Source: Mytilus trossulus
Lineage: Eukaryota
DNA length: 64,000 nucleotides
Direction: 5' to 3'
NCBI RefSeq assembly: GCF_036588685.1
Contig: NC_086379.1
Coordinates: forward strand, 40,238,001-40,302,000
Shown here piece by piece: positions 1 to 25,530 of the stretch. The notes under the pieces are model-generated. The model was not told where the DNA came from and made no database searches. It saw only the letters and a program-made list of their open reading frames with translations. The position numbers and the translations under genes are program-made. Each line of letters starts with the position of its first letter. Positions within the stretch are counted from its first letter, which is position 1.

Positions 1-67
1 AGAATATGGCCAGAGAAAATTAAAAGTGTCAACATATAAATAGTACACATTGAATATGTTTATTTCA

Positions 68-130
68 CAAGACAAGACAAGACAAGACAAGACAAGACAA
101 GTTGAAGACAAGACAAGACAAGACAACAAG
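68..130 (+). repeat. (GACAA)n pentanucleotide microsatellite
   Basis: About 10 GACAA units with one interruption, read directly. Confidence 0.9.
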
Positions 131-1111
131 ATATACATGTATATATACATGAATCTAAAACACACTTTCATGTCTGTTGTCTAGTTATTAAAAAAAACCA
201 TACATATATCTTACTGAAATTATTTATTTCAAAATTTAATAAAGTATTCAAATATGTTGAAATTAACAATCACAAAAGTTGCATTTCAGCAACCATTCAT
301 TAAAAATTAACAATGCAAAACTCTTTAATCAGTACAATCTTTTCTTTCTCTTAAGCTGTATTTCACCAAAAAAATACTCTTCTTTGTCATACCTTGCTTG
401 TAAGCTCTAGTTTGTTTATTTTACATTCATGAAATAACAACAAAGTGTATGTTTGAGTATGAAACAAACTGAAAATACTGAACATGACCATCAATGATTT
501 TTCCACTTGTGATTATGTTAATTAATGCAATAATCATACAATGTTTATCAAAACATACACAAGTACTTAACATGCTGTTAAATTCACCACATGAAGAAAT
601 GAGTGCTGGTCAACGTCCAAATCATTTTAGGAGAACAAGGTCTACACAAATCAAAAATTGTGAAAAATCTCTCAAATAAAATAAGTATACAAAAGTCAAG
701 TTAATCCAACTTCCTTATTTAAGGGTACTATGTATAGCTAATAATGAAGTTGCACTTCAGCAACAAACAGTTTTATAACAAAATTAAAACTGTATGATCT
801 AAAAAATCAGTTGCATTTCAGCTACTTACATGACTAATAAAAAAAAATTGAAATCTCAATAAAAATGTTCAATCTTAATATCTAATAAGTTGTGTATTTC
901 ACAAAAAAAGACTTAAATGTCAGAACAAAACCAATATCTTATTTCCATTCATCATAAGCCTTATCATGCCTAAGTTGTAGGTTCTTATGCTAGTTTCTTT
1001 TATTGTCAGGTGAAAAAAACCCAGGAAATACGGAACATGATATTGATACAAAGGCAATCAATGATAAAATCCTGCTGCTGAGTTTACCTGGTTTGATGTA
1101 AATCAATGCAA

Positions 1112-3000
1112 TTATACAATGTCCATTACCCATACAGAAGTATTTAAAATGTTGTTGAATTCGCTATGGAAAATAGTAAAATTTTCATAATTTCTTGGTA
1201 TTCTGAGAACACGACCACATGTATGGGCTATTGGTCGACGCCCAAAACCATCAAGAACTACAAATTCAACAGTGATTGTATCCTTCCCATCCAAAATTAA
1301 ATCTGAACCAGTGCAAAATCTAAGAAATTTTTTCAACAATACTTTATCAAGTTCTCTAACATACCGCTGAAGGTGGTTCATAACTTCACGTTCCAAATTA
1401 GACAAATTATCTGAAAAATGCAGCATTTTGGTAACTTTGCGATTGCTGGGTTCCATTTTACTGTATATTTCTGTCAAATTCTCATAAGAAAGAGACTGTC
1501 CGAGTTGAGTTAATATCTTGGCCCAAACATCAGTTATAAAGTTGCACTCCTGAACCATTTCCTTATGTGAGATTTCTAGCAAAATACGTTTAATGCTTTC
1601 TTTTGTGACTGCAGACCTGCAGCTATGATTCTCTAAAGCTTCTATAAGTTCATCATTATCCACTGACTCGTAATCTTTTAAAGCAGTTGAAAATAATGTT
1701 TTGTCTTCCTCAGTGATAAAACAAAGAAAATTTTCCATTAAATCTGACTTAAACTTTCCATACATTGCATTTTCCATAACAATTATGGAAAGTCCAATGG
1801 GCAAGTAATTGGCTATCTGCCATCCTTAAATATAATTCTGCCAATGGACAGCCACTGCTCCTCTTGAAAATCGTGTCTTATTGTAGGGACTTTCTGTGAA
1901 TTTCCAATGCAACAATTGTCCATAAACTCATTCCAAAATTCAGTAAGGCAATCTCTAAAAATTCCTTCCCCTACCCCTTCTTCCGCTTTTCCAGTTGGCA
2001 ATATCATACTGACATCAAAAAATGTAGCATACATTATTGTTGGATCTGAAAATATTTTCATCATTTCTATCATTGAATTTCCTCTATGAACCCTAATTTT
2101 CACAGAATGGAATGGATCAAGAAATAATTGTTCATTATTTATTAATCCAGGACCATCGGCGATTATTCCAAGACTATTAGTGATTATTCCAGGATCATTG
2201 GCGATATCAATATCAGCCAATACAGGTCCAAACTGAATTTCATCATCACTGCATATGTTCAAACTGGTATGCTCATTATAAGAATTATGAGAACTGTTAT
2301 TTTCATGATTTTCTAACATCAACAGCTGTGAAACACTTTCTTGGTCTTCATTTTCTTTGGTCATTGTTGTTGAATTCTTTTCTTGTTCAGTGTTATCCCT
2401 TTCTTTAGGTACAGTTAGTAAATAAAACCTTAACAGCCTCATTTTACTTCGGTCATAAATATTCTCTACAGACAAATCTAAATTAGCTGACTGGCGTTTA
2501 AAGTCCATGATGTCAACCACAAATTTTTCAATCTTACCCCTGGGTGATATTCCTTCTGGAAAGTAAAGTGTTAAAGCTGTTTCTTTTATGGTACTCACTA
2601 GAGTATCTTTATCAACAACAAGATGTCTCGTCCCCCCTCCAGTTGGCCCGCGAACTTGTTTCATCCTATCTCCTTCTTTCATCAGCCAACCAAGTTCTAT
2701 ACGCCTTTCACTTTTTGCTGCATGATCATTTCCAATATTCTTGGAAGTAGAAGGATTGTCATCACTATCACTTGAGCTTTCATCTATCGGTATATCTTTT
2801 TTTGTTTTAAACAAGTTTCTTTTTGATGATGGATGGAGTCTTTTTCTTATCTTATGTAATAGTGTCTTCTTTTTTTTGGACTTTGAACCTGTACCACCCT
2901 GGTTCTTACAAAAATCTTTCACAGCTATCCTGTCCCCATAGATAGGGATGTACTTTGCCAGTTCATCATCAGACAAAAATAATATCACTTGGCAATCAAG
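1112..3000 (-). CDS. HECT-domain E3 ubiquitin ligase (G2E3-like), main coding exon, with a 1-nt frameshift at about 1826
   Basis: ORFs 1813-2988 and 1112-1804 join if one base is added: ...GRIIFK|GWQIANYLPIGLS. HECT motifs are GEGIFRDCLTEFW, KFLRFCTGSD and the catalytic RRPIAHTCGRVLRIP. The splice acceptor atattttcag at 3001-3010 is in frame (LDCQVILFLSDDELAKY). It could be a young pseudogene or an assembly indel. Confidence 0.85.
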
Positions 3001-3079
3001 CTGAAAATATCAAAGAGACAAATGTTGATATAAGAGCTTGTATCATTTTGTTTGTACAACAGATGTATGTCAATATACA

Positions 3080-3667
3080 ACAGAGCCTGAAATTGCTCAC
3101 CTTGCAATTTACACTTTCTATTTACAACAATATTAACTAGAGGCTCTTTTTAGTCACGTTGACTTATTTGTAGATCTTACTTTGCTGAGCATTGTTGCTG
3201 CTTACAGTTTATCTCTATCTATACTATATAGTATTCAAGGTGATAACAAAAAAATGCAAAATTTCTTTAAAATTACCAATTGGGGGCATCAACCCAACAA
3301 CCAGTTGTCCAATTCATCTGAAAATTACTAAGTGGATATGTATTGACTTGACAAACGATTTAACCCCTTGACAGATTTGTTCTATTAAAGTGCTTTGGTT
3401 TTTGAGTTATAAGCTAAAAACTGCATTTTCCCCTGATGTTCTATTTTTAGCCATGGTGGCCATCTTGTCGGTCGGCCGGGTCACCTGACACATTTTTTAA
3501 CTAGTTACCCTAATGATGATTGTGGCCAAGTTTGATTTAAATTGTCCCAGTAGTTTCAGAGGAGAAGATTTTTGTAAGAGTTAAAGACGACGGACGACGA
3601 CAGACAACGACGGACGCAAAGTGATGGGAAAAGCTCACTTGGCCCTTTGGCCCAGGTGAGCTAAAAA
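3080..3667 (-). mobile_element. Non-autonomous Helentron-type (HINE-like) element in the HECT intron
   Basis: The minus strand starts TTTTTAGCTCACCTGG...GTGAGCT (subterminal hairpin) followed by a (CGT/GTC)n microsatellite. The far end has GGTGAGC..TTCAGGCTC and GAGCCTCTAGTT. This is the architecture known for bivalve HINE elements. Confidence 0.65.
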
Positions 3668-3926
3668 TATGGTTAAAAATAGATTTGAGGAGAACAGCTT
3701 GACATAAGTATAATTTTTTATGTGTGCAGATTTTAATAATATATGTTGCCTTTTTAAAAAAAAAGCTGTTTGAAAACATTTTATTTCTAATTTCAGTCTA
3801 GCCTTTGTTAGTACGACTTTGACCATGACATTTGATTGATGGATGGTGGTTTTAAAAACATGGCATTCAGATGCATATTCATAGTCTTTTTCTTATAAAT
3901 TGTAATATATTCAAATTCATGCTTAC

Positions 3927-3992
3927 CTTATCTTCTTCTATCTTGTCTACAGGAATGTTTCTTTCTTTTAAAAATTCTATCAGGGAGACCAT
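3927..3992 (-). CDS. First coding exon of the HECT gene (MVSLIEFLKERNIPVDKIEEDK)
   Basis: 66-nt ATG-initiated exon ending in AAG|gtaagc, phase 0. It splices in frame to the acceptor at 3000 and completes a SAM-like N-terminus. The repaired protein is about 651 aa. Confidence 0.75.
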
Positions 3993-4246
3993 TTTTCTTT
4001 GAAATTTCTATCAAAGATACAATCAATAATTAATTCTTATCAAAATACATTCATTTTGCAATAAAAATGTTTTTTTTTAAACTGTGAGGGCTACAATACT
4101 GTTTTGCTACTAATTTTTGATACACAATAGTTTCTGTCTATTGCATCAACTCCTGAACATGCTGGATAGCTTTAAATTTGACAATATGTATACAGAGATG
4201 TTTATTTACTAAATAATGTTAATTTTAGTTTATGACATGTGCAAAA

Positions 4247-4710
4247 TAAAATTGAGAATGAAAAAAGGAAATCTGTCAAAGAGACAGCAACCTGATGCGA
4301 ACAGAGAGCAGAAAACAGATGAAGGCCACCAACAGATCATCATCACAGCAAGGCAATGCTTTGGCTGGCCCCTAAACAAAAACATGTACACATTTAGGGA
4401 CGAAATCAAAAGATCAATGTAAGATTAAAAACTTAATTCAAATAGTTTGGGGGTGGGGGTTGAACTGCTGCACAAATTTGGTTATCCGACATTGATTTTT
4501 ACATATATCCATATGGGTCAATCAATTTTTCTCAAATTAAGTTAATAGGGGGGTAGGGGGGTCAGTGAAAAAACTATTTGAATTGAGTTTTTTATCCTTC
4601 ATTGAACTTTTGATGTCGTCCCTTAGTGATAAACGACATCATACTATAAACATCAACATATATATGAACTAAAATTAAAAATCATAAAAGACTAATTATT
4701 AATAAAGGCC
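4247..4710 (+). repeat. Dispersed SINE/Helentron-like repeat (family A, 'AAAATTGAGAATGGAAATGGGGAATGTGTCAAAGAGAC'), degenerate copy split by a MITE
   Basis: Similar by eye to copies at 26958-27087 (+), 37497-38089 (-) and 7290-8040. Confidence 0.6.
4397..4622. mobile_element. 226-bp PIF/Harbinger (Tourist-like) MITE
   Basis: 23-bp TIRs GGGACGAAATCAAAAGATCAATG / GGGACGACATCAAAAGTTCAATG, flanked by TTA on both sides (4394-4396, 4623-4625). Confidence 0.8.
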
Positions 4711-5353
4711 ACATTTAATGATTCAGTATCAATTTTATATTGTTTTACTTTTTTAACCAGATACAGTAAGTGGTGTCATATATGCTACTTATTTATATAC
4801 AATGTTTTGCTAAGTAAGCATCCCCATGCTTGGATGATGGTCAAATTGAGGGGTGAAGCCGGACCATGCATACATTTTCTGCTCAGTTTAGATCAAATTT
4901 TGGTGGCCAAGGTGTTTTTGAGATTATACCAATTTGTACAAAAATATGGAGAATAATTCAAATATTGGTCAAAGTCAGTCTGCCTCCTAGTTTATGGACA
5001 TACACATGATGTGACATAAATCACCTTCTTCGTTCGGTTGTACGATCTTTGCCTTTGGGATCAGATTAAATTGCGTTCCAAAGATGGGTGGGGAAAGGAA
5101 CGATTATCGTCACGGTGGTAACTTCAATATTTTTTTGTAAGATGTCCCCGGGTGAATGTGCCATTTCTCCATTTAAAATATATCCATCTTTCTATATATA
5201 TATAATACATTAAAATTGTGTATCCATATTATTTATATTGAAATAAACAGAGATTGATCTGTACTTATATATATATAATATATGTAATTTTATTAACCAA
5301 CTAAGAGTATGTTGGATGTGTACGGATTGAGTGTTTAGTCTTAGAGGCATGAT

Positions 5354-5745
5354 TTTTTATTAATTGTTAGTGGCTTTGAACTAGCTGTCAGATAACTGCG
5401 AATACTCTCAGATCTGTTCATAATGTCTTTTTGTGTCGGGATGTATAAATACCCGGCCACGTCCACTTGTATTTTGTGTCTATCTGATGAGTTCAGCCTT
5501 TTTAAACTGATTTTTATAGTTCGTTCTTATGTTGTACTGTTATACCACTGTCCCAGGTTAGGGGGCGGGTTGGGATCCCGCTAACATGGTTTAACCCCGC
5601 CACATTATTTATGTATGTGCCTGTCCCAAGTCAGGAGCCTGAACAACACAAACATTAACAATTATAGCCTGGTCACCTTACGGCCTTCAACAATGAGCAA
5701 AGCCCATACCTCATATAGTCAGCTATAAAAGGCCACGATAAGATA
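5354..5745. repeat. Rearranged copy of SINE-like family B
   Basis: 5354-5641 is the reverse complement of the family B part seen at about 56895-57180. 5642-5745 matches 55904-55996 in forward orientation. Confidence 0.7.
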
Positions 5746-5964
5746 GCCATTTCAAAAAAGAAAGTACCCCACCCTTTCCCATTTCCGAAAACCACTATAT
5801 AGAATACCTTTTATTGTTTTGAATAAAAAAAGAAGCTTACCTTACATACATAAACCAATTTGTAAACCTCTTTCAATTTAGTCTTCTTGAACACATGGTA
5901 ATGTCAGCTTGAGCTTTATTCTTCAAACGTGTGGAGCAACATGCAGTTATCTGTTCCTACTTAT

Positions 5965-6296
5965 TTTGTGCGCACATTATATTATGTCGTGCGCACAGTA
6001 TATTATGTTGTGCGCACAATATATTTAAATTGAGCGCACAATATATTATGTTGTGCGCACAATATATTTAAGTTGTGCGCACAGTATATTATGTTGTGCG
6101 CACAATATATTTAAGTTGTGCGCACAATATATTATTTTGTGCGCACAATATATTATTTTGTGCGCACAATATATTATTTTGTGCGCACAATATATTTAAG
6201 TTGTGCGCACAATATATTTAAGTTGTGCGCACAATATATTATGTTGTGCGCACAATATATATTTTTTTCTTTGCAGGTCCCTAGCGGGGCTCCGTA
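5965..6296 (-). mobile_element. Terminal inverted repeat of an IS3EU-like DNA transposon (orphan end; partner presumably upstream of the window)
   Basis: About 14 tandem 20-22-bp units with core TTGTGCGCACAA, ending ...GTCCCTAGCGGGGCTCCGTA, the same terminus as the elements at 6368-13335. TAY..RTA termini with 6-bp TSDs are the described IS3EU signature. Confidence 0.75.
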
Positions 6297-6367
6297 CAAA
6301 CGCAAAGATATCATCAAAATGCTGATAAAATAATAATAAAAAAAACAACAACAAAAAACCAAAAACC

Positions 6368-9300
6368 TACGGAGCCCCGCTAGGGATATACAAAGAAAAA
6401 AAAAAATATTGTGCGCACAAAATAATATATTGTGCGCACAACTTAAATATATTGTGCGCACAAAATAATATATTGTGCGCACAACTTAAATATATTGTGC
6501 GCACAACATAATATACTGTGGGCACAACTTAAATATAGTGTGCGCACAACTTAAATATAGTGTGCGCACAACTTGAATATAGTGTGCGCATAACTTACAC
6601 ATATTGTGCGCATAACTTAAATATACTGTGCGCACTCAAATAATATGGTGTGCTCCCAAAATTCGGAAAACAGTTTTCACTTGACCATGACCTCATTTTA
6701 CATGTAAAGTGTTCGTGGTTTAGACAAAATCTCAGATACCAAATTCAATAGTTCTTCTATATTTGGTTGTATTGAACGATTTTAATGGCTAAATGTTCAC
6801 TTCACAGGTGTCATCTGACTTTGGCATACTCCATTTTTAGGGTTAAGTGGTCCAGCAAAGTGAAATGTTTGTGTTTTGGTGTATTTCTCGGATACTATAA
6901 GTATTTAGTTAGATATATATTTGGGGTATAGAATGTTTGTATGGTGAAATTGTCTATCTTGCAATTATATTAACCTGACCTTGATTTTATAGTCATGGTT
7001 CATTGGTCCATGTTATTTGATTCTTGTTTGGTATTTTTTTCAGATACTATAAAGAATAAATTAACAATATTTTTTTATGGAATGATTGTTATGTATATAT
7101 ATTTGGCTAGTCGGTATCATCTGACCTTGACTTTGCTTTCATGGTTTATTTGTTACTGTTAAATATCTCAGAATTGGTCTGTTTTTCAGATACGATGATA
7201 AAGGTATAGTTAAACTTTATTTAATGTACAAAATAATTATAAGGCTCTCAAATCATATAAGTGGTGTTTCTCAGATACATTTGGTTCTTCAATACAGCAA
7301 GAAAAAATCCCGCACCCAAATGCGTGCTTCAGCTGGCCTATAAACAAACATATGGACTAGTTCAGTGATAATGGACGTCATACAACTTAACAGTTGTTTT
7401 TCGTTTCTCGTTTTTTATATAAATTAGACCGTTGGTTTTCCCGTTTGAAAGGTTTTACACTAGTAATTTTGGAGACCCTTTATAGCTTTCTGTTCGGTGT
7501 GAGCCTAAGCTATGTGTTGAAGACCGTACCGTGACCTATAATGGTTTACTTTTATAAATTGTGACTTATAGATGGAGAGTTGTCTCATTTTCACTCATAC
7601 CACCTCTTCCTTTTTTATCCAAAGTATATACAAGAAACTAAAATTAAAAATCCTACAAGACCAACAAAGGCCAGAAGCTCCTGACCTTGGGCAGGCACAA
7701 AAATGCGGCGGAGTTAAACATGTTTTGTGAGATCTCAACCCTCCTTTTATACCTCTAGCCAAATTGAATGCAGATTAAAAAAAAACCACAAACACAGCAA
7801 TACTGACAGTAAAGAAGCCCGTGTCCGTTGTCAGAATAGGTATCAAATGAAACTTAACAAAATGACAATGATACATTAAAAAACAAGGATTACTAGCAGT
7901 TACTGATATGCCAGCTCCACACCTCAATTAAACTGATTGAAAGATTATGTTTTAATCATATGAATATCAAGCACAATCCTTCCCGTTAGGTGTTTAGTAT
8001 CATACCATCATAAAAATATGTGAGAAGAATATAACCCGTATTTGTATGAGCTATGGTGTATATGTATATACTGTAGTTGTCTCTTTCGATTGATCGCGAT
8101 CAATCGGGCCTAAAGGTTTTGAATAAATGATACTCCAAAACGGACCATATTTGGAAAAATGAATCATAATTGTTTCGATTGTTTTCAAAATATTTCACTG
8201 AGGAATTTCTTTGACTATTCCTAAATGGTATCGTAACATTTCAATTTCATAATGAGTACGAACAACATACCGTAAAATTTTATAATGAAATCGATCAAAA
8301 ATAGATACTATAAGTGACCTCTTGTCCTCTTCTATTAATCAGAATGAAACTATAACTTGACCTGAAACATTTGTATACAAGGCTTTATTTAATTTAAATC
8401 ATAATAGGCATACTGCTCTATGTCGGGAGCTTGTTATTCAGTGATTGTCGTTTATTTGTATGGTTCATATCTGTTTATCGTTTTGTTATAGTCATTTTGA
8501 GCCGTATAGTTTGCTGTTTGGTGTGAGCCAACGCTCCGTGATAGGGACCGTAATATAACCAATGATTGTTAACTTAAAGTCTTTTAATAAATTATGACTT
8601 GGTTGGAGAGCTGTCTCATTGGCACTCATATTGATTCTTCTGCTTTGTATGTACCCAGTTTTATCTTTATTTGATCACAACTTCATGGTGAATTTCTTAG
8701 ACTGAACACACCGTCATATTTCAATAACGAACAGTACATCTTTGGTGAGAACCGTACTTAACCATGATCAAACATAGTCACCTTTGATAAAAAAAAAAAA
8801 AAAAAACCAAAAACAACAAAACAACGTGTACGTGTATTCAGTTTTCAGTGGATTTGACTTACTCTACGCTTTTACAATGATACCTTTTAAGAAACCACAT
8901 ACTTCATTGAAGTTGGTGACACTAAAACTTCATCATAAACTTTAACCAAAACATTTACAATAAACAGAGACGGACGGATGAACGGACGTAAAGACTTCTA
9001 CATATAACGACCATCTCTATCGTCAAACAGGGTAACAAAATCAAAGTCGTGAATTGAGTTACATGTCAGTCTTGAGACTCAGAGTCAATCAACATAAACA
9101 AAATATTGAGATTTTTAGACATAAAGTATAATGCATCAGTGCAAAACGTACTTTTCTTATATATGTTACAAGAAAACAGGTAAAACCATAGTATCAAAGT
9201 CTACATAAGTTCGATAGTTTCCTCGCTCTTTTGTCAAGTCTGTTTCAAACCGTTCCAATAAACTCTGATATACAGTGGAGGCTTCCAATGCATAGGTTGG

Positions 9301-9779
9301 TAAACCAAGTGTCAGACGAAATAAACGTAACTTCTTTAGTATTCCTGTCAGGAGTTGATACAAATGCAGTGATGAATATTTCCATGTATTCTAGCCCCAT
9401 TTCAAAAGAAACCTTATGCATTTCTTCATTCTGTCACTTTAAAAAGGAGACATTGAAGACCCATACCATGTGTAAGGTCAAAGGATTTCATGCGCACGAT
9501 ATATTTAATTTGTGAGCACAATATATTTATTTTGTGCGCACGATATATTTAAGTTGTGCGCACAATATATTTAAGTTGTGCGCACAATATATTTAAGTTG
9601 TGCGCACAATATATTTAAGTTGTGCGCACAATATATTTAAATTGTGCGCACAATATATTATTTTGTGCGCACACTATATTATTGTGTGCGCACACTATAT
9701 TATTTTGTGCGCACAATTTATTTTAGTTGTGCGCACAATATATTTTCTTTTCTTTGCATGTCCCTAGCAGGGCTCCGTA
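6368..9779 (+). mobile_element. Non-autonomous IS3EU-like DNA transposon, copy 1 (3412 bp)
   Basis: Starts TACGGAGCCCCGCTAGGG and ends CCCTAGCAGGGCTCCGTA. About 300-bp TTGTGCGCACAA arrays at both ends, nested host repeats inside, and a decayed transposase-like piece at about 9183-9433 (-). Confidence 0.85.
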
Positions 9780-9945
9780 ATTTTCTATGAAGTGTTTTAT
9801 TGATTTTTTTTGCATATTAAAAATGCTTTTTCTATGACGCGTTTTATTAATTTTAATGCACATTAAAAATGCATTTTTTGTGAAGCGATTTATTGATTTT
9901 TTTGTCTATTCGTTTAGTTGAATTTGTGTTGTCTGTTTTGGTTTT

Positions 9946-12900
9946 TACGGAGCCCTGCTAGGGACATGCAAAGAAAAGAAAATATATTGTGCGCACAACT
10001 AAAATAAATTGTGCGCACAAAATAATATAGTGTGCGCACACAATAATATAGTGTGCGCACAAAATAATATATTGTGCGCACAATTTAAATATATTGTGCG
10101 CACAACTTAAATATATTGTGCGCACAACTTAAATATATTGTGCGCACAACTTAAATATATCGTGCGCACAAAATAAATATATTGTGCTCACAAATTAAAT
10201 ATATCGTGCGCATGAAATCCTTTGACCTTACACATGGTATGGGTCTTCAATGTCTCCTTTTTAAAGTGACAGAATGAAGAAATGCATAAGGTTTCTTTTG
10301 AAATGGGGCTAGAATACATGGAAATATTCATCACTGCATTTGTATCAACTCCTGACAGGAATACTAAAGAAGTTACGTTTATTTCGTCTGACACTTGGTT
10401 TACCAACCTATGCATTGGAAGCCTCCACTGTATATCAGAGTTTATTGGAACGGTTTGAAACAGACTTGACAAAAGAGCGAGGAAACTATCGAACTTATGT
10501 AGACTTTGATACTATGGTTTTACCTGTTTTCTTGTAACATATATAAGAAAAGTACGTTTTGCACTGATGCATTATACTTTATGTCTAAAAATCTCAATAT
10601 TTTGTTTATGTTGATTGACTCTGAGTCTCAAGACTGACATGTAACTCAATTCACGACTTTGATTTTGTTACCCTGTTTGACGATAGAGATGGTCGTTATA
10701 TGTAGAAGTCTTTACGTCCGTTCATCCGTCCGTCTCTGTTTATTGTAAATGTTTTGGTTAAAGTTTATGATGAAGTTTTAGTGTCACCAACTTCAATGAA
10801 GTATGTGGTTTCTTAAAAGGTATCATTGTAAAAGCGTAGAGTAAGTCAAATCCACTGAAAACTGAATACACGTACACGTTGTTTTGTTGTTTTTGGTTTT
10901 TTTTTTATTTTTTTATCAAAGGTGACTATGTTTGATCATGGTTAAGTACGGTTCTCACCAAAGATGTACTGTTCGTTATTGAAATATGACGGTGTGTTCA
11001 GTCTAAGAAATTCACCATGAAGTTGTGATCAAATAAAGATAAAACTGGGTACATACAAAGCAGAAGAATCAATATGAGTGCCAATGAGACAGCTCTCCAA
11101 CCAAGTCATAATTTATTAAAAGACTTTAAGTTAACAATCATTGGTTATATTACGGTCCCTATCACGGAGCGTTGGCTCACACCAAACAGCAAACTATACG
11201 GCTCAAAATGACTATAACAAAACGATAAACAGATATGAACCATACAAATAAACGACAATCACTGAATAACAAGCTCCCGACATAGAGCAGTATGCCTATT
11301 ATGATTTAAATTAAATAAAGCCTTGTATACAAATGTTTCAGGTCAAGTTATAGTTTCATTCTGATTAATAGAAGAGGACAAGAGGTCACTTATAGTATCT
11401 ATTTTTGATCGATTTCATTATAAAATTTTACGGTATGTTGTTCGTACTCATTATGAAATTGAAATGTTACGATACCATTTAGGAATAGTCAAAGAAATTC
11501 CTCAGTGAAATATTTTGAAAACAATCGAAACAATTATGATTCATTTTTCCAAATATGGTCCGTTTTGGAGTATCATTTATTCAAAACCTTTAGGCCCGAT
11601 TGATCGCGATCAATCGAAAGAGACAACTACAGTATATACATATACACCATAGCTCATACAAATACGGGTTATATTCTTCTCACATATTTTTATGATGGTA
11701 TGATACTAAACACCTAACGGGAAGGATTGTGCTTGATATTCATATGATTAAAACATAATCTTTCAATCAGTTTAATTGAGGTGTGGAGCTGGCATATCAG
11801 TAACTGCTAGTAATCCTTGTTTTTTAATGTATCATTGTCATTTTGTTAAGTTTCATTTGATACCTATTCTGACAACGGACACGGGCTTCTTTACTGTCAG
11901 TATTGCTGTGTTTGTGGTTTTTTTTTAATCTGCATTCAATTTGGCTAGAGGTATAAAAGGAGGGTTGAGATCTCACAAAACATGTTTAACTCCGCCGCAT
12001 TTTTGTGCCTGCCCAAGGTCAGGAGCTTCTGGCCTTTGTTGGTCTTGTAGGATTTTTAATTTTAGTTTCTTGTATATACTTTGGATAAAAAAGGAAGAGG
12101 TGGTATGAGTGAAAATGAGACAACTCTCCATCTATAAGTCACAATTTATAAAAGTAAACCATTATAGGTCACGGTACGGTCTTCAACACATAGCTTAGGC
12201 TCACACCGAACAGAAAGCTATAAAGGGTCTCCAAAATTACTAGTGTAAAACCTTTCAAACGGGAAAACCAACGGTCTAATTTATATAAAAAACGAGAAAC
12301 GAAAAACAACTGTTAAGTTGTATGACGTCCATTATCACTGAACTAGTCCATATGTTTGTTTATAGGCCAGCTGAAGCACGCATTTGGGTGCGGGATTTTT
12401 TCTTGCTGTATTGAAGAACCAAATGTATCTGAGAAACACCACTTATATGATTTGAGAGCCTTATAATTATTTTGTACATTAAATAAAGTTTAACTATACC
12501 TTTATCATCGTATCTGAAAAACAGACCAATTCTGAGATATTTAACAGTAACAAATAAACCATGAAAGCAAAGTCAAGGTCAGATGATACCGACTAGCCAA
12601 ATATATATACATAACAATCATTCCATAAAAAAATATTGTTAATTTATTCTTTATAGTATCTGAAAAAAATACCAAACAAGAATCAAATAACATGGACCAA
12701 TGAACCATGACTATAAAATCAAGGTCAGGTTAATATAATTGCAAGATAGACAATTTCACCATACAAACATTCTATACCCCAAATATATATCTAACTAAAT
12801 ACTTATAGTATCCGAGAAATACACCAAAACACAAACATTTCACTTTGCTGGACCACTTAACCCTAAAAATGGAGTATGCCAAAGTCAGATGACACCTGTG

Positions 12901-13335
12901 AAGTGAACATTTAGCCATTAAAATCGTTCAATACAACCAAATATAGAAGAACTATTGAATTTGGTATCTGAGATTTTGTCTAAACCACGAACACTTTACA
13001 TGTAAAATGAGGTCATGGTCAAGTGAAAACTGTTTTCCGAATTTTGGGAGCACACCATATTATTTGAGTGCGCACAGTATATTTAAGTTATGCGCACAAT
13101 ATGTGTAAGTTATGCGCACACTATATTCAAGTTGTGCGCACACTATATTTAAGTTGTGCGCACACTATATTTAAGTTGTGCCCACAATATATTATGTTGT
13201 GCGCACAATATATTTAAGTTGTGCGCACAATATATTATTTTGTGCGCACAATATATTTAAGTTGTGCGCACAATATATTATTTTGTGCGCACAATATATT
13301 TTTTTTTCTTTGTATGTCCCTAGCGGGGCTCCGTA
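9946..13335 (-). mobile_element. Non-autonomous IS3EU-like DNA transposon, copy 2 (3390 bp), inverted relative to copy 1
   Basis: Near-exact reverse complement of 6368-9779. Mirrored ORFs are identical (9231-9515 vs 10188-10472). It differs by one 22-bp array unit and a few substitutions. Confidence 0.85.
10270..10520 (+). pseudogene. Decayed N-terminus of an IS3EU-type transposase (mirror copy at about 9183-9433, minus strand)
   Basis: Fragments across frames (SFEMGLEYMEI, HHCICI, GILKKLRLFR, ISEFI, SEETIELM*TL) follow the order I recall for the HTH region of these transposases (YFxxGxxYxEI...HxIxIS.RTLKRILxxLxLFRR...V.xFI...ETVR.L..LDP). It lies just inside the TIR array. Recognition is by eye. 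Confidence 0.45.
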
Positions 13336-13651
13336 GAAAATATTTAGGTTATTAACACAAAAATTAATAACACGCATTATAGAAAATTCAATATATTATG
13401 GGCAAAAAAATAATACAACACCTTAAATTGCACTTTTAATGTAACGTATGTGCTACAGATTGCCACGGAGTAAGTCTTCTTTCGATTTTGCCACAGTGTA
13501 CTATTAGTATCATTTTTATCTCGAATCGTGGTCACATACACATTGAATGTATAACTCAGATATATTTTGAAAGTCCCATCACATGATGATGTCTGTGAAA
13601 CACAAAACGATGACTCTATCTTTACTGGTTCAATAACGTTATTGTAAGCAG

Positions 13652-24773: not shown

Positions 24774-25530
24774 CTAATCGTATATATTAGTTTGTTTCTT
24801 TGAGCCTGACTTCCGGTGTTTGTGCGGTCTTAGTACCACCTGACCATTTGTATAGTCAACAGAAAAGTAACGTGTGCTGGAAAATCTCTTCGTTTGTTTG
24901 TTTATTTCAAGTGCTGCATTGTCATCATAAAATCTATATCTACAACATTTCACCATCATTTTAATCCGAATCCGAATTTTTCTGCTGAATAAGCAATATA
25001 TAATTGGATTTATTCCACTATTAGAAAGTCCAAGCCATTGAGCAATTGGTACAATGTAATTGTTAAGTAAACGGACGAAGTCGAGGTTATCATATTCATC
25101 CATTTGGAAATATATTAAGAATTTAATGATATAAAGCGGTAGCCAGGAAAACAGAAACAGTACAACAACAACAGTTAACATCTTCACTGCCTTGACCTTC
25201 GACTTGTGAATTACTCCATTGGACTTGTAAACGCCAGGGGCGTTCCTGTTCCAAACACGAAATCCGATCAATGAATAGCAAATGATTATCAGAACTAATG
25301 GCACAGCATAACAGCAAATACAAATTCCAACAAAATATATTTTTTCTAGAAACTTATTTTCCCAATTTTCACCACATACATACAGTAAGCTACCACTTTG
25401 TACATATCGTTGATAAAACAAAGCCATTGGTATCGAGATGATTAGGGAAAATATCCATATAGCAAACATGATACATTTGGATGTTTTCCACTTCATTTTA
25501 TAGTTGAATGTATAGCAAATGGCTAGGTAC
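24774..25530 (-). CDS. SIFaR: Neuropeptide GPCR (SIFamide/NPFF receptor-like), exon 3: TM4-TM7 and C-tail
   Basis: Acceptor tttcag|G TAC CTA GCC completes DRY. Contains CCYAVPLVLIIICY, KVKAVKML, FSWLPLY and PIAQWLGLSNSGINPIIY. The AQWLG TM7 motif is typical of the SIFaR/NPFFR clade. The symbol is a family-level call. Confidence 0.92.

What the first reader, a model, noticed from the sequence alone, without database searches (positions are those of the whole stretch)
1112..6296. HECT E3 ubiquitin ligase apparently carried as cargo inside an IS3EU-like DNA transposon
Seen: the HECT gene is transcribed away from, and lies on the inner side of, an unpaired transposon end at 6296. A candidate non-coding first exon (about 5950-5841, ending AAG|gtaagc) begins right at the inner edge of the terminal array. 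In the sister elements the transposase remnant reads inward from the other end. Established: IS3EU elements have TAY..RTA ends and 6-bp TSDs and are described as two-gene elements. Inference: the full element is TIR - transposase > ... < SAM-like/HECT ligase - TIR, meaning a transposon with its own ubiquitin ligase, possibly an anti-silencing or transposase-turnover factor. This would also explain lineage-specific expansions of compact G2E3-like genes.
Basis: partly seen in the sequence, partly recalled or inferred. Interest (0 to 1): 0.85.

Follow-up and report, generated by a model that had tools for sequence, protein, structure and literature searches.

The report
Mussel transposon carrying a HECT ligase
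The HECT ubiquitin-ligase gene in this mussel window sits inside a complete 11.8-kb cut-and-paste DNA transposon of the IS3EU type, and related mussel, fish and other animal elements carry the same transposase-plus-ligase pair, although this particular copy of the ligase gene is broken.

Summary
The partner end (TACGGAGCCCC...) lies 5,527 bp upstream of the window and is preceded by CAAACG, the same 6 bp that follow the end at 6296. That defines an 11,824-bp element with TA..TA termini, a 6-bp target-site duplication, a plus-strand rva_4 (DDE) transposase and a convergent minus-strand HECT gene.

Three other complete copies in this Mytilus trossulus genome are collinear, each with its own 6-bp duplication. 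A second family (ligase about 40% identical) has the same layout, with a ligase beside 17 of 18 transposase copies. All ten metagenome contigs with enough flank, one fish-like, also pair ligase and transposase, and the two gene trees agree.

The protein has a SAM-like domain, a ubiquitin-like domain and a full HECT fold with an invariant catalytic cysteine.

Corrections:
- The window's ligase gene is a pseudogene, with a 1-nt deletion near 1828 and a 72-nt in-frame deletion.
- RNA reads give no support for the proposed non-coding exon.
- The protein is not G2E3-like in architecture.

I found no paper pairing IS3EU with HECT. The scan found the same pairing twice before on other DNA of this genome. 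What the ligase does remains inference.

The parts
1..1111 (.). Interior of the element downstream of the HECT stop codon; non-coding. The element continues to its left end 5,527 bp before window base 1 (L010:4473-10000). That part holds the left TIR and array and the transposase gene (L010:4834-5709 plus a second exon near L010:6411-6719, plus strand).
   Evidence: Window 1-1100 recurs at 90-97% identity at five other places in the genome. The whole 11.8 kb is collinear with the other copies. Left end and TSD. Transposase: rva_4 E = 2.8e-27.
1112..3000 (-). HECT gene, large coding exon (stop codon 1112-1114). It is broken by a 1-nt deletion near 1828, which makes the frame stop at 1813-1815, and it lacks 72 nt in frame near 2207. 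The catalytic AHTC motif lies 34 residues before the C-terminus, in the downstream frame.
   Evidence: ORFs 1813-2988 and 1112-1804 are in different frames. The indels are copy-specific against four other copies. Pfam HECT. Alignment with P0001 and P0002. Translation from 3000.
3001..3926 (-). Intron between the two coding exons (GTAAGC donor, TTTTCAG acceptor), holding a nested high-copy repeat at about 3124-3654.
   Evidence: Splice sites were read from the sequence. The two-exon model matches NCBI's model of the family-2 gene, P0001. RNA depth of 400-1,400 only on 3124-3654 shows an unrelated high-copy repeat.
3927..3992 (-). HECT gene, first coding exon (22 codons, start of the SAM-like domain).
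   Evidence: Translation gives MVSLIEFLKERNIPVDKIEEDK. It is homologous to the first exon of P0001 and P0002.
5841..5950 (-). Only a donor-like AAG|GTAAGC motif is present; the exon is not supported.
   Evidence: Sequence. RNA depth is 0-0.8 and no joint was reported.
5961..6260 (.). Right sub-terminal array, 14 copies of a 21-22 bp unit with the palindromic core TTGTGCGCACAA. These are probably transposase binding sites (inference).
   Evidence: TRF output. The same kind of array stands at the left end and in all copies. Family 2 has 22-bp units with the same GTGCGCAC core.
6261..6296 (.). Terminal sequence of the right inverted repeat, ending ...CCCTAGCGGGGCTCCGTA.
   Evidence: It is the reverse complement of the left terminus TACGGAGCCCCGCTAGGGA. 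There are 139 genomic matches to the 19-mer against 0 for the control.
6297..6302 (.). Target-site duplication CAAACG, right copy.
   Evidence: The same hexamer directly precedes the left end at L010:4467-4472.
6368..9779 (.). Sister element E2, a 3,412-bp non-autonomous derivative of the same family. It is inverted relative to the large element and keeps a stop-containing remnant of the transposase start near 9317-9418 (minus strand).
   Evidence: Ends and arrays. Similarity of E2 2950-3412 to E1 498-1.
9946..13335 (.). Sister element E3, a 3,390-bp inverted twin of E2 (100% complementary over 3,271 nt).
   Evidence: I1. The flanks are aaaacc/attttc for E2 and ggtttt/gaaaat for E3, which are two 6-bp duplications swapped by an inversion.

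Best explanation
Window 1-6296 is the right-hand 6.3 kb of one 11,824-bp IS3EU/GingerRoot-type cut-and-paste DNA transposon of Mytilus trossulus. The element has TACGG..CCGTA termini, sub-terminal arrays of 21-22 bp repeats and a 6-bp target-site duplication.

It has two convergent genes. One is a DDE (rva_4) transposase that reads inward from the left end. The other is a two-exon gene for a protein of about 650 residues that reads inward from the right end. That protein has a SAM-like domain, a ubiquitin-like domain, a disordered linker and a complete HECT domain.

The ligase gene is an integral, vertically co-inherited second gene of this transposon lineage. It is not a host gene caught between two insertions, and it is not a one-off passenger.

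The window's copy belongs to an older family whose ligase genes have each decayed. A younger family in the same genome keeps intact copies.

What the ligase does is inferred only. My likeliest reading is that it ubiquitylates a partner the element depends on, either a host repressor (counter-silencing) or the transposase/transpososome itself (turnover or disassembly). Fungal IS3EU elements carry an alpha-kinase in the same position and orientation.
For: - Partner end with the identical CAAACG flank, 11.8 kb away.
- Three other complete copies, collinear at 91-97% identity, carry their own duplications: CATGGA, TTTTTC and ATTTAC. Two further partial copies exist.
- Transposase: rva_4 E = 2.8e-27 with the D, D, E motifs HLDSYDK, RGDLGTEN and NQRIESWW.
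- Family 2: a 17,094-bp element with duplication GTATAG and the same layout. A ligase gene lies near 17 of 18 transposase copies, convergent in all; in 15 pairs the gap is 5.63-5.69 kb, in one 6.4 kb and in one about 27 kb.
- Between the two families only the ends, the transposase (56% and 46% identity) and the ligase (30-39%) are conserved.
- The majority consensus of five family-1 copies has an uninterrupted 654-codon frame, so each break arose after insertion.
- Substitutions shared by copies are 6 non-synonymous to 7 synonymous, against 79 to 25 for singletons and a neutral expectation of about 4 to 1.
- Cys639 is invariant, and His637 and Thr638 are conserved in at least 90% of 53 diverse homologues.
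- The AlphaFold model (pLDDT 82) matches whole HECT domains: HUWE1 E = 1e-12, also UBR5, NEDD4 and E6AP. The middle domain has a ubiquitin-like fold.
- All 10 metagenome contigs with at least 2.3 kb downstream of a ligase homologue carry a convergent rva_4 transposase. Several have TACGGAGCCC-type ends and sub-terminal arrays. One is fish-like, 77% identical to a Merluccius polli protein.
- Ligase and transposase trees share three cherries and show no supported conflict.
- Literature: IS3EU has TA..TA (fungal TAYGG..CCRTA) termini and 6-bp duplications, and fungal elements have a transposase and an alpha-kinase in opposite orientation (PMC10045372, PMC12730594).
Against: - The window's ligase gene is frameshifted, and all five family-1 copies examined are broken. 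Three family-1 transposase first exons are still open. The ligase may therefore be dispensable, supplied in trans, or the family may be dead.
- Three raw RNA runs give exon depth of 3 or less and no splice joints.
- Another IS3EU-like transposase lineage in this genome has no ligase within 10 kb, so the pairing is a clade feature and not a superfamily feature.
- No direct comparison with Repbase IS3EU proteins was possible.
- Ligase activity, substrates and any effect on transposition are untested.
- Tree congruence could partly reflect host relationships.
Confidence: 0.9

Rival explanations
1. The ligase gene is a passenger. A host HECT gene was captured once by a transposon (transduplication) and is carried along without any role for the element.
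For: - All family-1 ligase copies are broken while some transposase exons remain open.
- Expression is negligible in three RNA runs.
- IS3EU and GingerRoot elements are known to pick up foreign genes: TET/JBP in fungi and gene fragments in Selaginella.
Against: - The pair is kept in the same convergent layout in two mussel families with about 40% ligase identity, in a fish-like contig and in several other metagenome lineages.
- The gene trees agree.
- The catalytic Cys is invariant in 53 homologues.
- Shared substitutions are biased toward synonymous changes.
- Family 2 and the metagenome elements have intact ORFs of 658-674 codons.
Confidence: 0.07
2. The HECT gene is an ordinary host gene. 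The end at 6296 is a solo remnant of an unrelated insertion next to it, and the other copies are segmental duplications.
For: Only one end lies in the window, and nested repeats fill the 2 kb between the gene and that end.
Against: - The matching left end with the identical 6-bp flank was found.
- Copies on other chromosomes end at exactly the same terminal bases and have different 6-bp duplications.
- Similarity between copies stops at the termini.
Confidence: 0.02
3. The ligase is a domesticated or host-beneficial gene that merely remains linked to transposon ends, for example an immune or developmental E3 family spread by transposition.
For: Large multi-copy families of similar proteins of 620-750 residues are annotated as ordinary genes in fishes, a frog, beetles and bivalves.
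Against: Wherever flanks could be read, the gene sits beside a transposase inside terminal repeats. Copies decay like transposon copies.
Confidence: 0.05

Closest known systems
[quoted passage not shown] 2019, PMC6839031; Kojima 2023, PMC10045372)
   Same: - Integrase-like DDE transposase without an HHCC finger.
- TA..TA termini, here TACGG..CCGTA as in the fungal TAYGG..CCRTA.
- 6-bp target-site duplication and long terminal repeats.
- Wide occurrence in aquatic animals, including oysters and fishes.
   Different: No searchable paper mentions a HECT gene in these elements. [quoted passage not shown] The sub-terminal arrays of 21-22 bp palindrome-cored repeats are not described in the papers read.
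Fungal IS3EU elements with an alpha-kinase gene, some also with TET/JBP dioxygenase (Kojima 2025, PMC12730594)
   Same: A two-gene plan with the second, protein-modifying enzyme gene in the opposite orientation to the transposase. Same termini and duplication length.
   Different: The accessory enzyme is a kinase (plus a DNA demethylase in some elements), not a ubiquitin ligase, and the hosts are fungi. Any functional equivalence is inference.
Cellular HECT E3 ligases (HUWE1, UBR5, NEDD4, E6AP)
   Same: A predicted bilobal HECT fold over about 380 aligned columns, and a catalytic Cys about 34 residues from the C-terminus in an HTC motif.
   Different: - Only 11-15% sequence identity.
- Pfam sees only the C-lobe, and there is no PDB sequence match.
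- The N-terminal part is SAM-like plus ubiquitin-like. It has none of the C2/WW domains of NEDD4 or the large scaffolds of HUWE1 and UBR5.
- The gene is carried by a mobile element.
   Same: It is a compact protein with a C-terminal HECT domain, and database names of some relatives use 'G2E3-like'.
   Different: No PHD/RING-type fingers were detected. The architecture is SAM-like, then ubiquitin-like, then HECT. No direct alignment with G2E3 was made.
Transposon- and virus-encoded counter-silencing or ubiquitin-system factors (VANC of Arabidopsis VANDAL elements, herpesvirus ICP0, bacterial HECT-like effectors). Recalled from my own knowledge, not tested here.
   Same: A mobile element carries its own enzyme or factor that acts on host regulation.
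   Different: The protein families and hosts are different, and no target is known here.

Membership tests
IS3EU/GingerRoot DNA transposon | DDE transposase with an integrase-like core and no N-terminal HHCC zinc finger | tested here: met
   - Pfam rva_4 hits: E = 2.8e-27 (family 1), 1.2e-27 (family 2) and 4.2e-33 (L027).
- The D, D, E motifs are visible in the sequence, and those columns are invariant or nearly invariant in alignment A4.
- No His/Cys finger is present in the N-terminal 130 residues.
IS3EU/GingerRoot DNA transposon | TA..TA termini (TAYGG..CCRTA in fungal IS3EU) | tested here: met
   TACGGAG...CTCCGTA in family 1 and TACGGAAG...CTTCCGTA in family 2.
IS3EU/GingerRoot DNA transposon | 6-bp target-site duplication | tested here: met
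   CAAACG, CATGGA, TTTTTC and ATTTAC and GTATAG. E2 and E3 carry AAAACC and GAAAAT, swapped by an inversion.
IS3EU/GingerRoot DNA transposon | Transposase groups with Repbase IS3EU and GingerRoot transposases in a tree | not testable with these tools
Indirect support only: close homologues occur in oysters, Oryzias and other fishes, the taxa named for GingerRoot relatives.
HECT ubiquitin ligase | Bilobal HECT fold | tested here: met
   AlphaFold model of the family-2 protein, pLDDT 97-98 over residues 345-670. Foldseek: HUWE1 HECT E = 9.8e-13, 381 columns, TM 0.59 on the target.
HECT ubiquitin ligase | Catalytic cysteine about 32-36 residues from the C-terminus | tested here: met
   AHTC lies 34 residues before the C-terminus in the window copy. 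Cys639 is invariant in 53 homologues. In the window the motif lies downstream of the frameshift, so it cannot be made from the start codon.
HECT ubiquitin ligase | Forms a ubiquitin thioester and ligates ubiquitin | not testable with these tools
   This needs an in vitro assay with a Cys mutant.
G2E3-like ligase | N-terminal PHD/RING-type zinc fingers before the HECT domain | tested here: not met
   There are no such Pfam hits. The model shows a five-helix SAM-like domain and a ubiquitin-like domain instead.
Autonomous (functional) transposon copy | Both genes open in this copy | tested here: not met
   The ligase exon is frameshifted near 1828. The aligned transposase exons are open.

The most novel reading that the evidence does not exclude
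A clade of IS3EU transposons spread through molluscs, teleost fishes and other animals depends on a self-encoded SAM-ubiquitin-like-HECT ligase for its life cycle. The ligase would destroy a host repressor, or it would mark the transposase complex for removal, possibly with the p97 segregase. This would be the first DNA-transposon lineage with its own ubiquitin ligase. It would also explain many 'uncharacterized HECT protein' gene families in animal genomes.
Probability: 0.45. Interest if true: 0.85.

Novelty: new variant of a known kind. Interest (0 to 1): 0.68.

Why it matters
- Transposons are known to carry transposases and, now and then, counter-silencing factors. A conserved ubiquitin ligase as a standing second gene would add the ubiquitin system to the means a DNA transposon brings with it.
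- It would give a testable handle on how IS3EU elements, whose biology is largely unexplored, deal with their hosts.
- It would re-label large families of multi-copy HECT genes in fish, beetle and bivalve annotations as transposon genes.
- The parallel with the alpha-kinase of fungal IS3EU suggests a general need of this superfamily for a protein-modifying partner.

Tried and rejected
- **Complex prediction:** Complex prediction of the transposase (residues 17-295) with the ligase N-terminal half (1-235) gave no answer, score 0.00. This is not evidence either way.
- **RNA reads:** three raw RNA runs and one contig run were laid on window 1000-6300. Exon depth was 3 or less, and no joint was reported for 5841 to exon 1 or for 3927 to 3000. 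High depth fell only on nested repeats. One contig of run X1 stops matching exactly at 3000, the exon-2 acceptor, with 109 further letters. X1's nature (RNA or DNA) is a guess, and it also covers the intron and the arrays, so I draw nothing from it.
- **Collection scans:** The search for related loci on genome contigs failed with the wide alignment and found nothing with P0134.
- **Sequence search of the PDB:** no hit.
- **A third candidate lineage** (C10:5695xxxx) has a transposase fragment 4 kb from a HECT ORF in convergent orientation, but no recognisable ends. Its 190-nt inverted repeat looks like an unrelated interspersed repeat, so I dropped it.
- **p97 binding:** a UBX reading of the middle domain rests on one Pfam hit at threshold in L027 and weak fold matches. 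It is a lead only.
- The pieces were searched apart, and the intact family-2 protein P0001 stood in for the whole protein. The five-copy consensus was used only inside a script to test for an open frame.

Full report
**What is in the window**

The sequence is AT-rich eukaryotic DNA. It lies at C7:40238001-40302000 of a 1.3-Gb assembly. Protein matches identify the assembly as Mytilus trossulus.

At 5961-6260 there is an array of 14 units of 21-22 bp with the core TTGTGCGCACAA. It is followed by a terminal sequence ending ...GGGGCTCCGTA at 6296.

On the minus strand, inside this end, lies a two-exon gene:
- Exon 1 is 3927-3992 (22 codons).
- The intron runs from 3926 to 3001, with a GTAAGC donor and a TTTTCAG acceptor.
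- Exon 2 runs from 3000 to the stop codon at 1112-1114.
- The C-terminal part matches Pfam HECT (E = 4.6e-7).

I fetched the 40 kb upstream. At L010:4473, 5,527 bp before window base 1, stands TACGGAGCCCCGCTAGGGA, preceded by CAAACG. Those are the same six bases that follow the end at 6296. The element is therefore 11,824 bp long, with TA..TA termini and a 6-bp target-site duplication.

Just inside the left end, on the plus strand, is an open frame of 291 codons. It carries the motifs HLDSYDK, RGDLGTEN and NQRIESWW and matches Pfam rva_4, an integrase core (E = 2.8e-27). A second exon follows.

**Other copies**

- The first 1,100 bases of the window already recur elsewhere at 90-97% identity.
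- Three further complete copies are collinear with the whole 11.8 kb. Each has its own duplication: CATGGA, TTTTTC and ATTTAC. Two more copies are partial.
- The terminal 19-mer occurs 139 times in the genome, against 0 for the control. Most pairs of ends lie 1.7-7 kb apart, so short non-autonomous derivatives dominate and only five or six copies are two-gene elements of 12-13 kb.

**State of the window's ligase gene**

The two long ORFs of exon 2 are in different frames. Aligned with four other copies, the window copy lacks one base near 1828 and 72 bases (in frame) near 2207. Every other copy has different frame-breaking indels of its own.

A majority consensus, built only inside a script, has an uninterrupted frame of 654 codons. 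The founder was therefore intact and the breaks came after insertion.

| Substitutions | Non-synonymous | Synonymous |
|---|---|---|
| Singletons (one copy only) | 79 | 25 |
| Shared by two or more copies | 6 | 7 |
| Neutral expectation (ratio) | about 4 | 1 |

These counts fit neutral decay of inserted copies and purifying selection on the lineage that produced them, though the shared class is small.

**A second family**

- A search with the ligase piece found 17 or so loci at about 40% identity, at least ten of them with open frames of 658 codons and near-identical to each other.
- One copy read in full (C10) is a 17,094-bp element with the duplication GTATAG. Its ends are TACGGAAGCCCTGGAGTGCCATGC. 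It has 22-bp arrays with the same GTGCGCAC core, a plus-strand transposase and a minus-strand ligase.
- Of 18 copies of this transposase exon, 17 have the ligase nearby in convergent orientation. In 15 pairs the gap is 5.63-5.69 kb, in one 6.4 kb and in one about 27 kb.
- Its terminal 24-mer occurs 156 times, against 0 for the control.
- Between the two families only the ends, the transposase (56% and 46% identity in its two exons) and the ligase (30-39%) are recognisably conserved.
- One locus of a more distant IS3EU-like transposase lineage has no ligase within 10 kb. The pairing therefore marks a clade, not the whole superfamily.

**Beyond this genome**

- The ligase family is large: 2,404 cluster representatives at E of 0.001 or better.
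- Named members come from fishes, a frog, beetles and bivalves, often in several loci per genome.
- The transposase has 50-72% identical relatives in the same groups.
Fifteen contigs encode ligase relatives. All ten with at least 2.3 kb of downstream sequence carry a convergent rva_4 transposase.
- L027 begins with TACGGAGCCCAGTAAGTGCCATGG and has 12-bp arrays at both ends. L028 ends with the reverse complement of that terminus. L025 is a compact element of about 6.7 kb with a 674-codon ligase ORF and 22-bp arrays. Its ligase is 77% identical to a Merluccius polli protein, so the contig is teleost-like.
- Trees of the ligase C-terminal half and of the transposase core for nine elements share the cherries (L025, L037), (L027, L028) and (L031, L033), with no supported conflict.

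**The protein**

With a 53-sequence alignment, AlphaFold gives a confident model (mean pLDDT 82):

| Residues (family-2 protein) | Domain | Support |
|---|---|---|
| 7-68 | Five-helix SAM-like domain | |
| 121-230 | Beta-grasp domain; matches Atg8, SUMO, ubiquitin-like and UBX folds at E of about 4e-4 | |
| 232-340 | Disordered linker | |
| 345-670 | HECT domain; matches whole HECT domains of HUWE1, UBR5, NEDD4 and E6AP, best E = 1e-12 | |

Cys639 is invariant, and the neighbouring His and Thr are nearly so. No PHD or RING fingers are present, so 'G2E3-like' does not describe the architecture.

**Expression**

Three raw RNA runs of the same species label give a depth of 3 or less on the exons. 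The depth is below 1 on the proposed non-coding exon 5841-5950. No supporting joints were reported. This neither shows nor excludes expression of the intact family, which I could not test because only one reads call was available.

**Literature**

- IS3EU elements have TA..TA termini and 6-bp duplications and group with GingerRoot (PMC10045372).
- Fungal IS3EU end in TAYGG..CCRTA and carry a transposase and an alpha-kinase in opposite orientation, some also with TET/JBP (PMC12730594).
- No paper in the library holds both 'IS3EU' and 'HECT', and the GingerRoot paper mentions neither HECT nor ubiquitin. Repbase itself could not be consulted.

**Earlier notes of this scan**

Two follow-ups on other pieces of this genome reached the same reading for elements of 25 kb and 16.3 kb. 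Two first-reader notes on this window describe the palindrome with swapped duplications and the cluster of three insertions. I found the swapped duplications independently, before reading those notes.

**Mechanism**

Shown: the structure of the element, its transposition signature, the conserved linkage of the two genes, and the conserved catalytic motif and fold.

Inferred: that the ligase is active and serves the element. Two readings seem about equally plausible.
- It may remove a host repressor, as the TET/JBP genes of fungal transposons are thought to counter methylation.
- It may act on the transposase complex, for turnover or disassembly. A ubiquitin-like or UBX-like domain next to the HECT domain, and one Pfam UBX hit at threshold, make help from p97 a lead, no more.

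The decay of all family-1 ligase genes while some family-1 transposase exons stay open is a caution against calling the ligase essential.

Noticed in passing
window 6362-13341: E2 (6368-9779) and E3 (9946-13335) are inverted twins, 100% complementary over 3,271 nt. Their 6-bp flanks pair crosswise: aaaacc with ggtttt, and attttc with gaaaat. That is the pattern expected if recombination between two inverted copies flipped the 166-bp spacer. A mis-oriented spacer in the assembly would look the same.
   Followed up: partly
window 5961-13335; also C8:49622323-49638032 and C14:15879627-15911946: Elements of these families cluster. Three lie within 7.4 kb here, a 3-kb element abuts a 12.6-kb one on C8, and two full family-2 elements sit head to head 130 bp apart on C14. 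This suggests local hopping.
   Followed up: partly
window 3124-3654, 4363-4716, 5248-5778: Three nested high-copy repeats inside the element have RNA depths of 50-1,400 and many loose ends and back-joints in all runs. They are unrelated abundant repeats of the mussel genome, not part of the ligase transcript.
   Followed up: no
window 9780-9903: The spacer between E2 and E3 is itself a 46-bp tandem repeat (2.7 copies). A related motif (tagaaaat...) recurs just right of E3 at 13336-13390.
   Followed up: no
window 24774-25496 (minus): A 240-codon ORF matches rhodopsin-family 7TM receptors (Pfam 7tm_1, E = 1.5e-25). It is probably an exon of a host GPCR gene.
   Followed up: no
L027:1177-2502: The N-terminal exon of a metagenome ligase homologue hits Pfam UBX just at the curated cut-off (21.4 bits, cut-off 21). 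An Atlas cluster of related proteins also carries UBX in 38% of its members. This hints that the middle domain is UBX-like.
   Followed up: partly
protein P0134: A 631-residue member of the ligase family is deposited as a protein of a 'Candidatus Thiodiazotropha' MAG, a symbiont of clams, on a 10.8-kb contig. This is most likely host DNA binned into the bacterial genome.
   Followed up: partly
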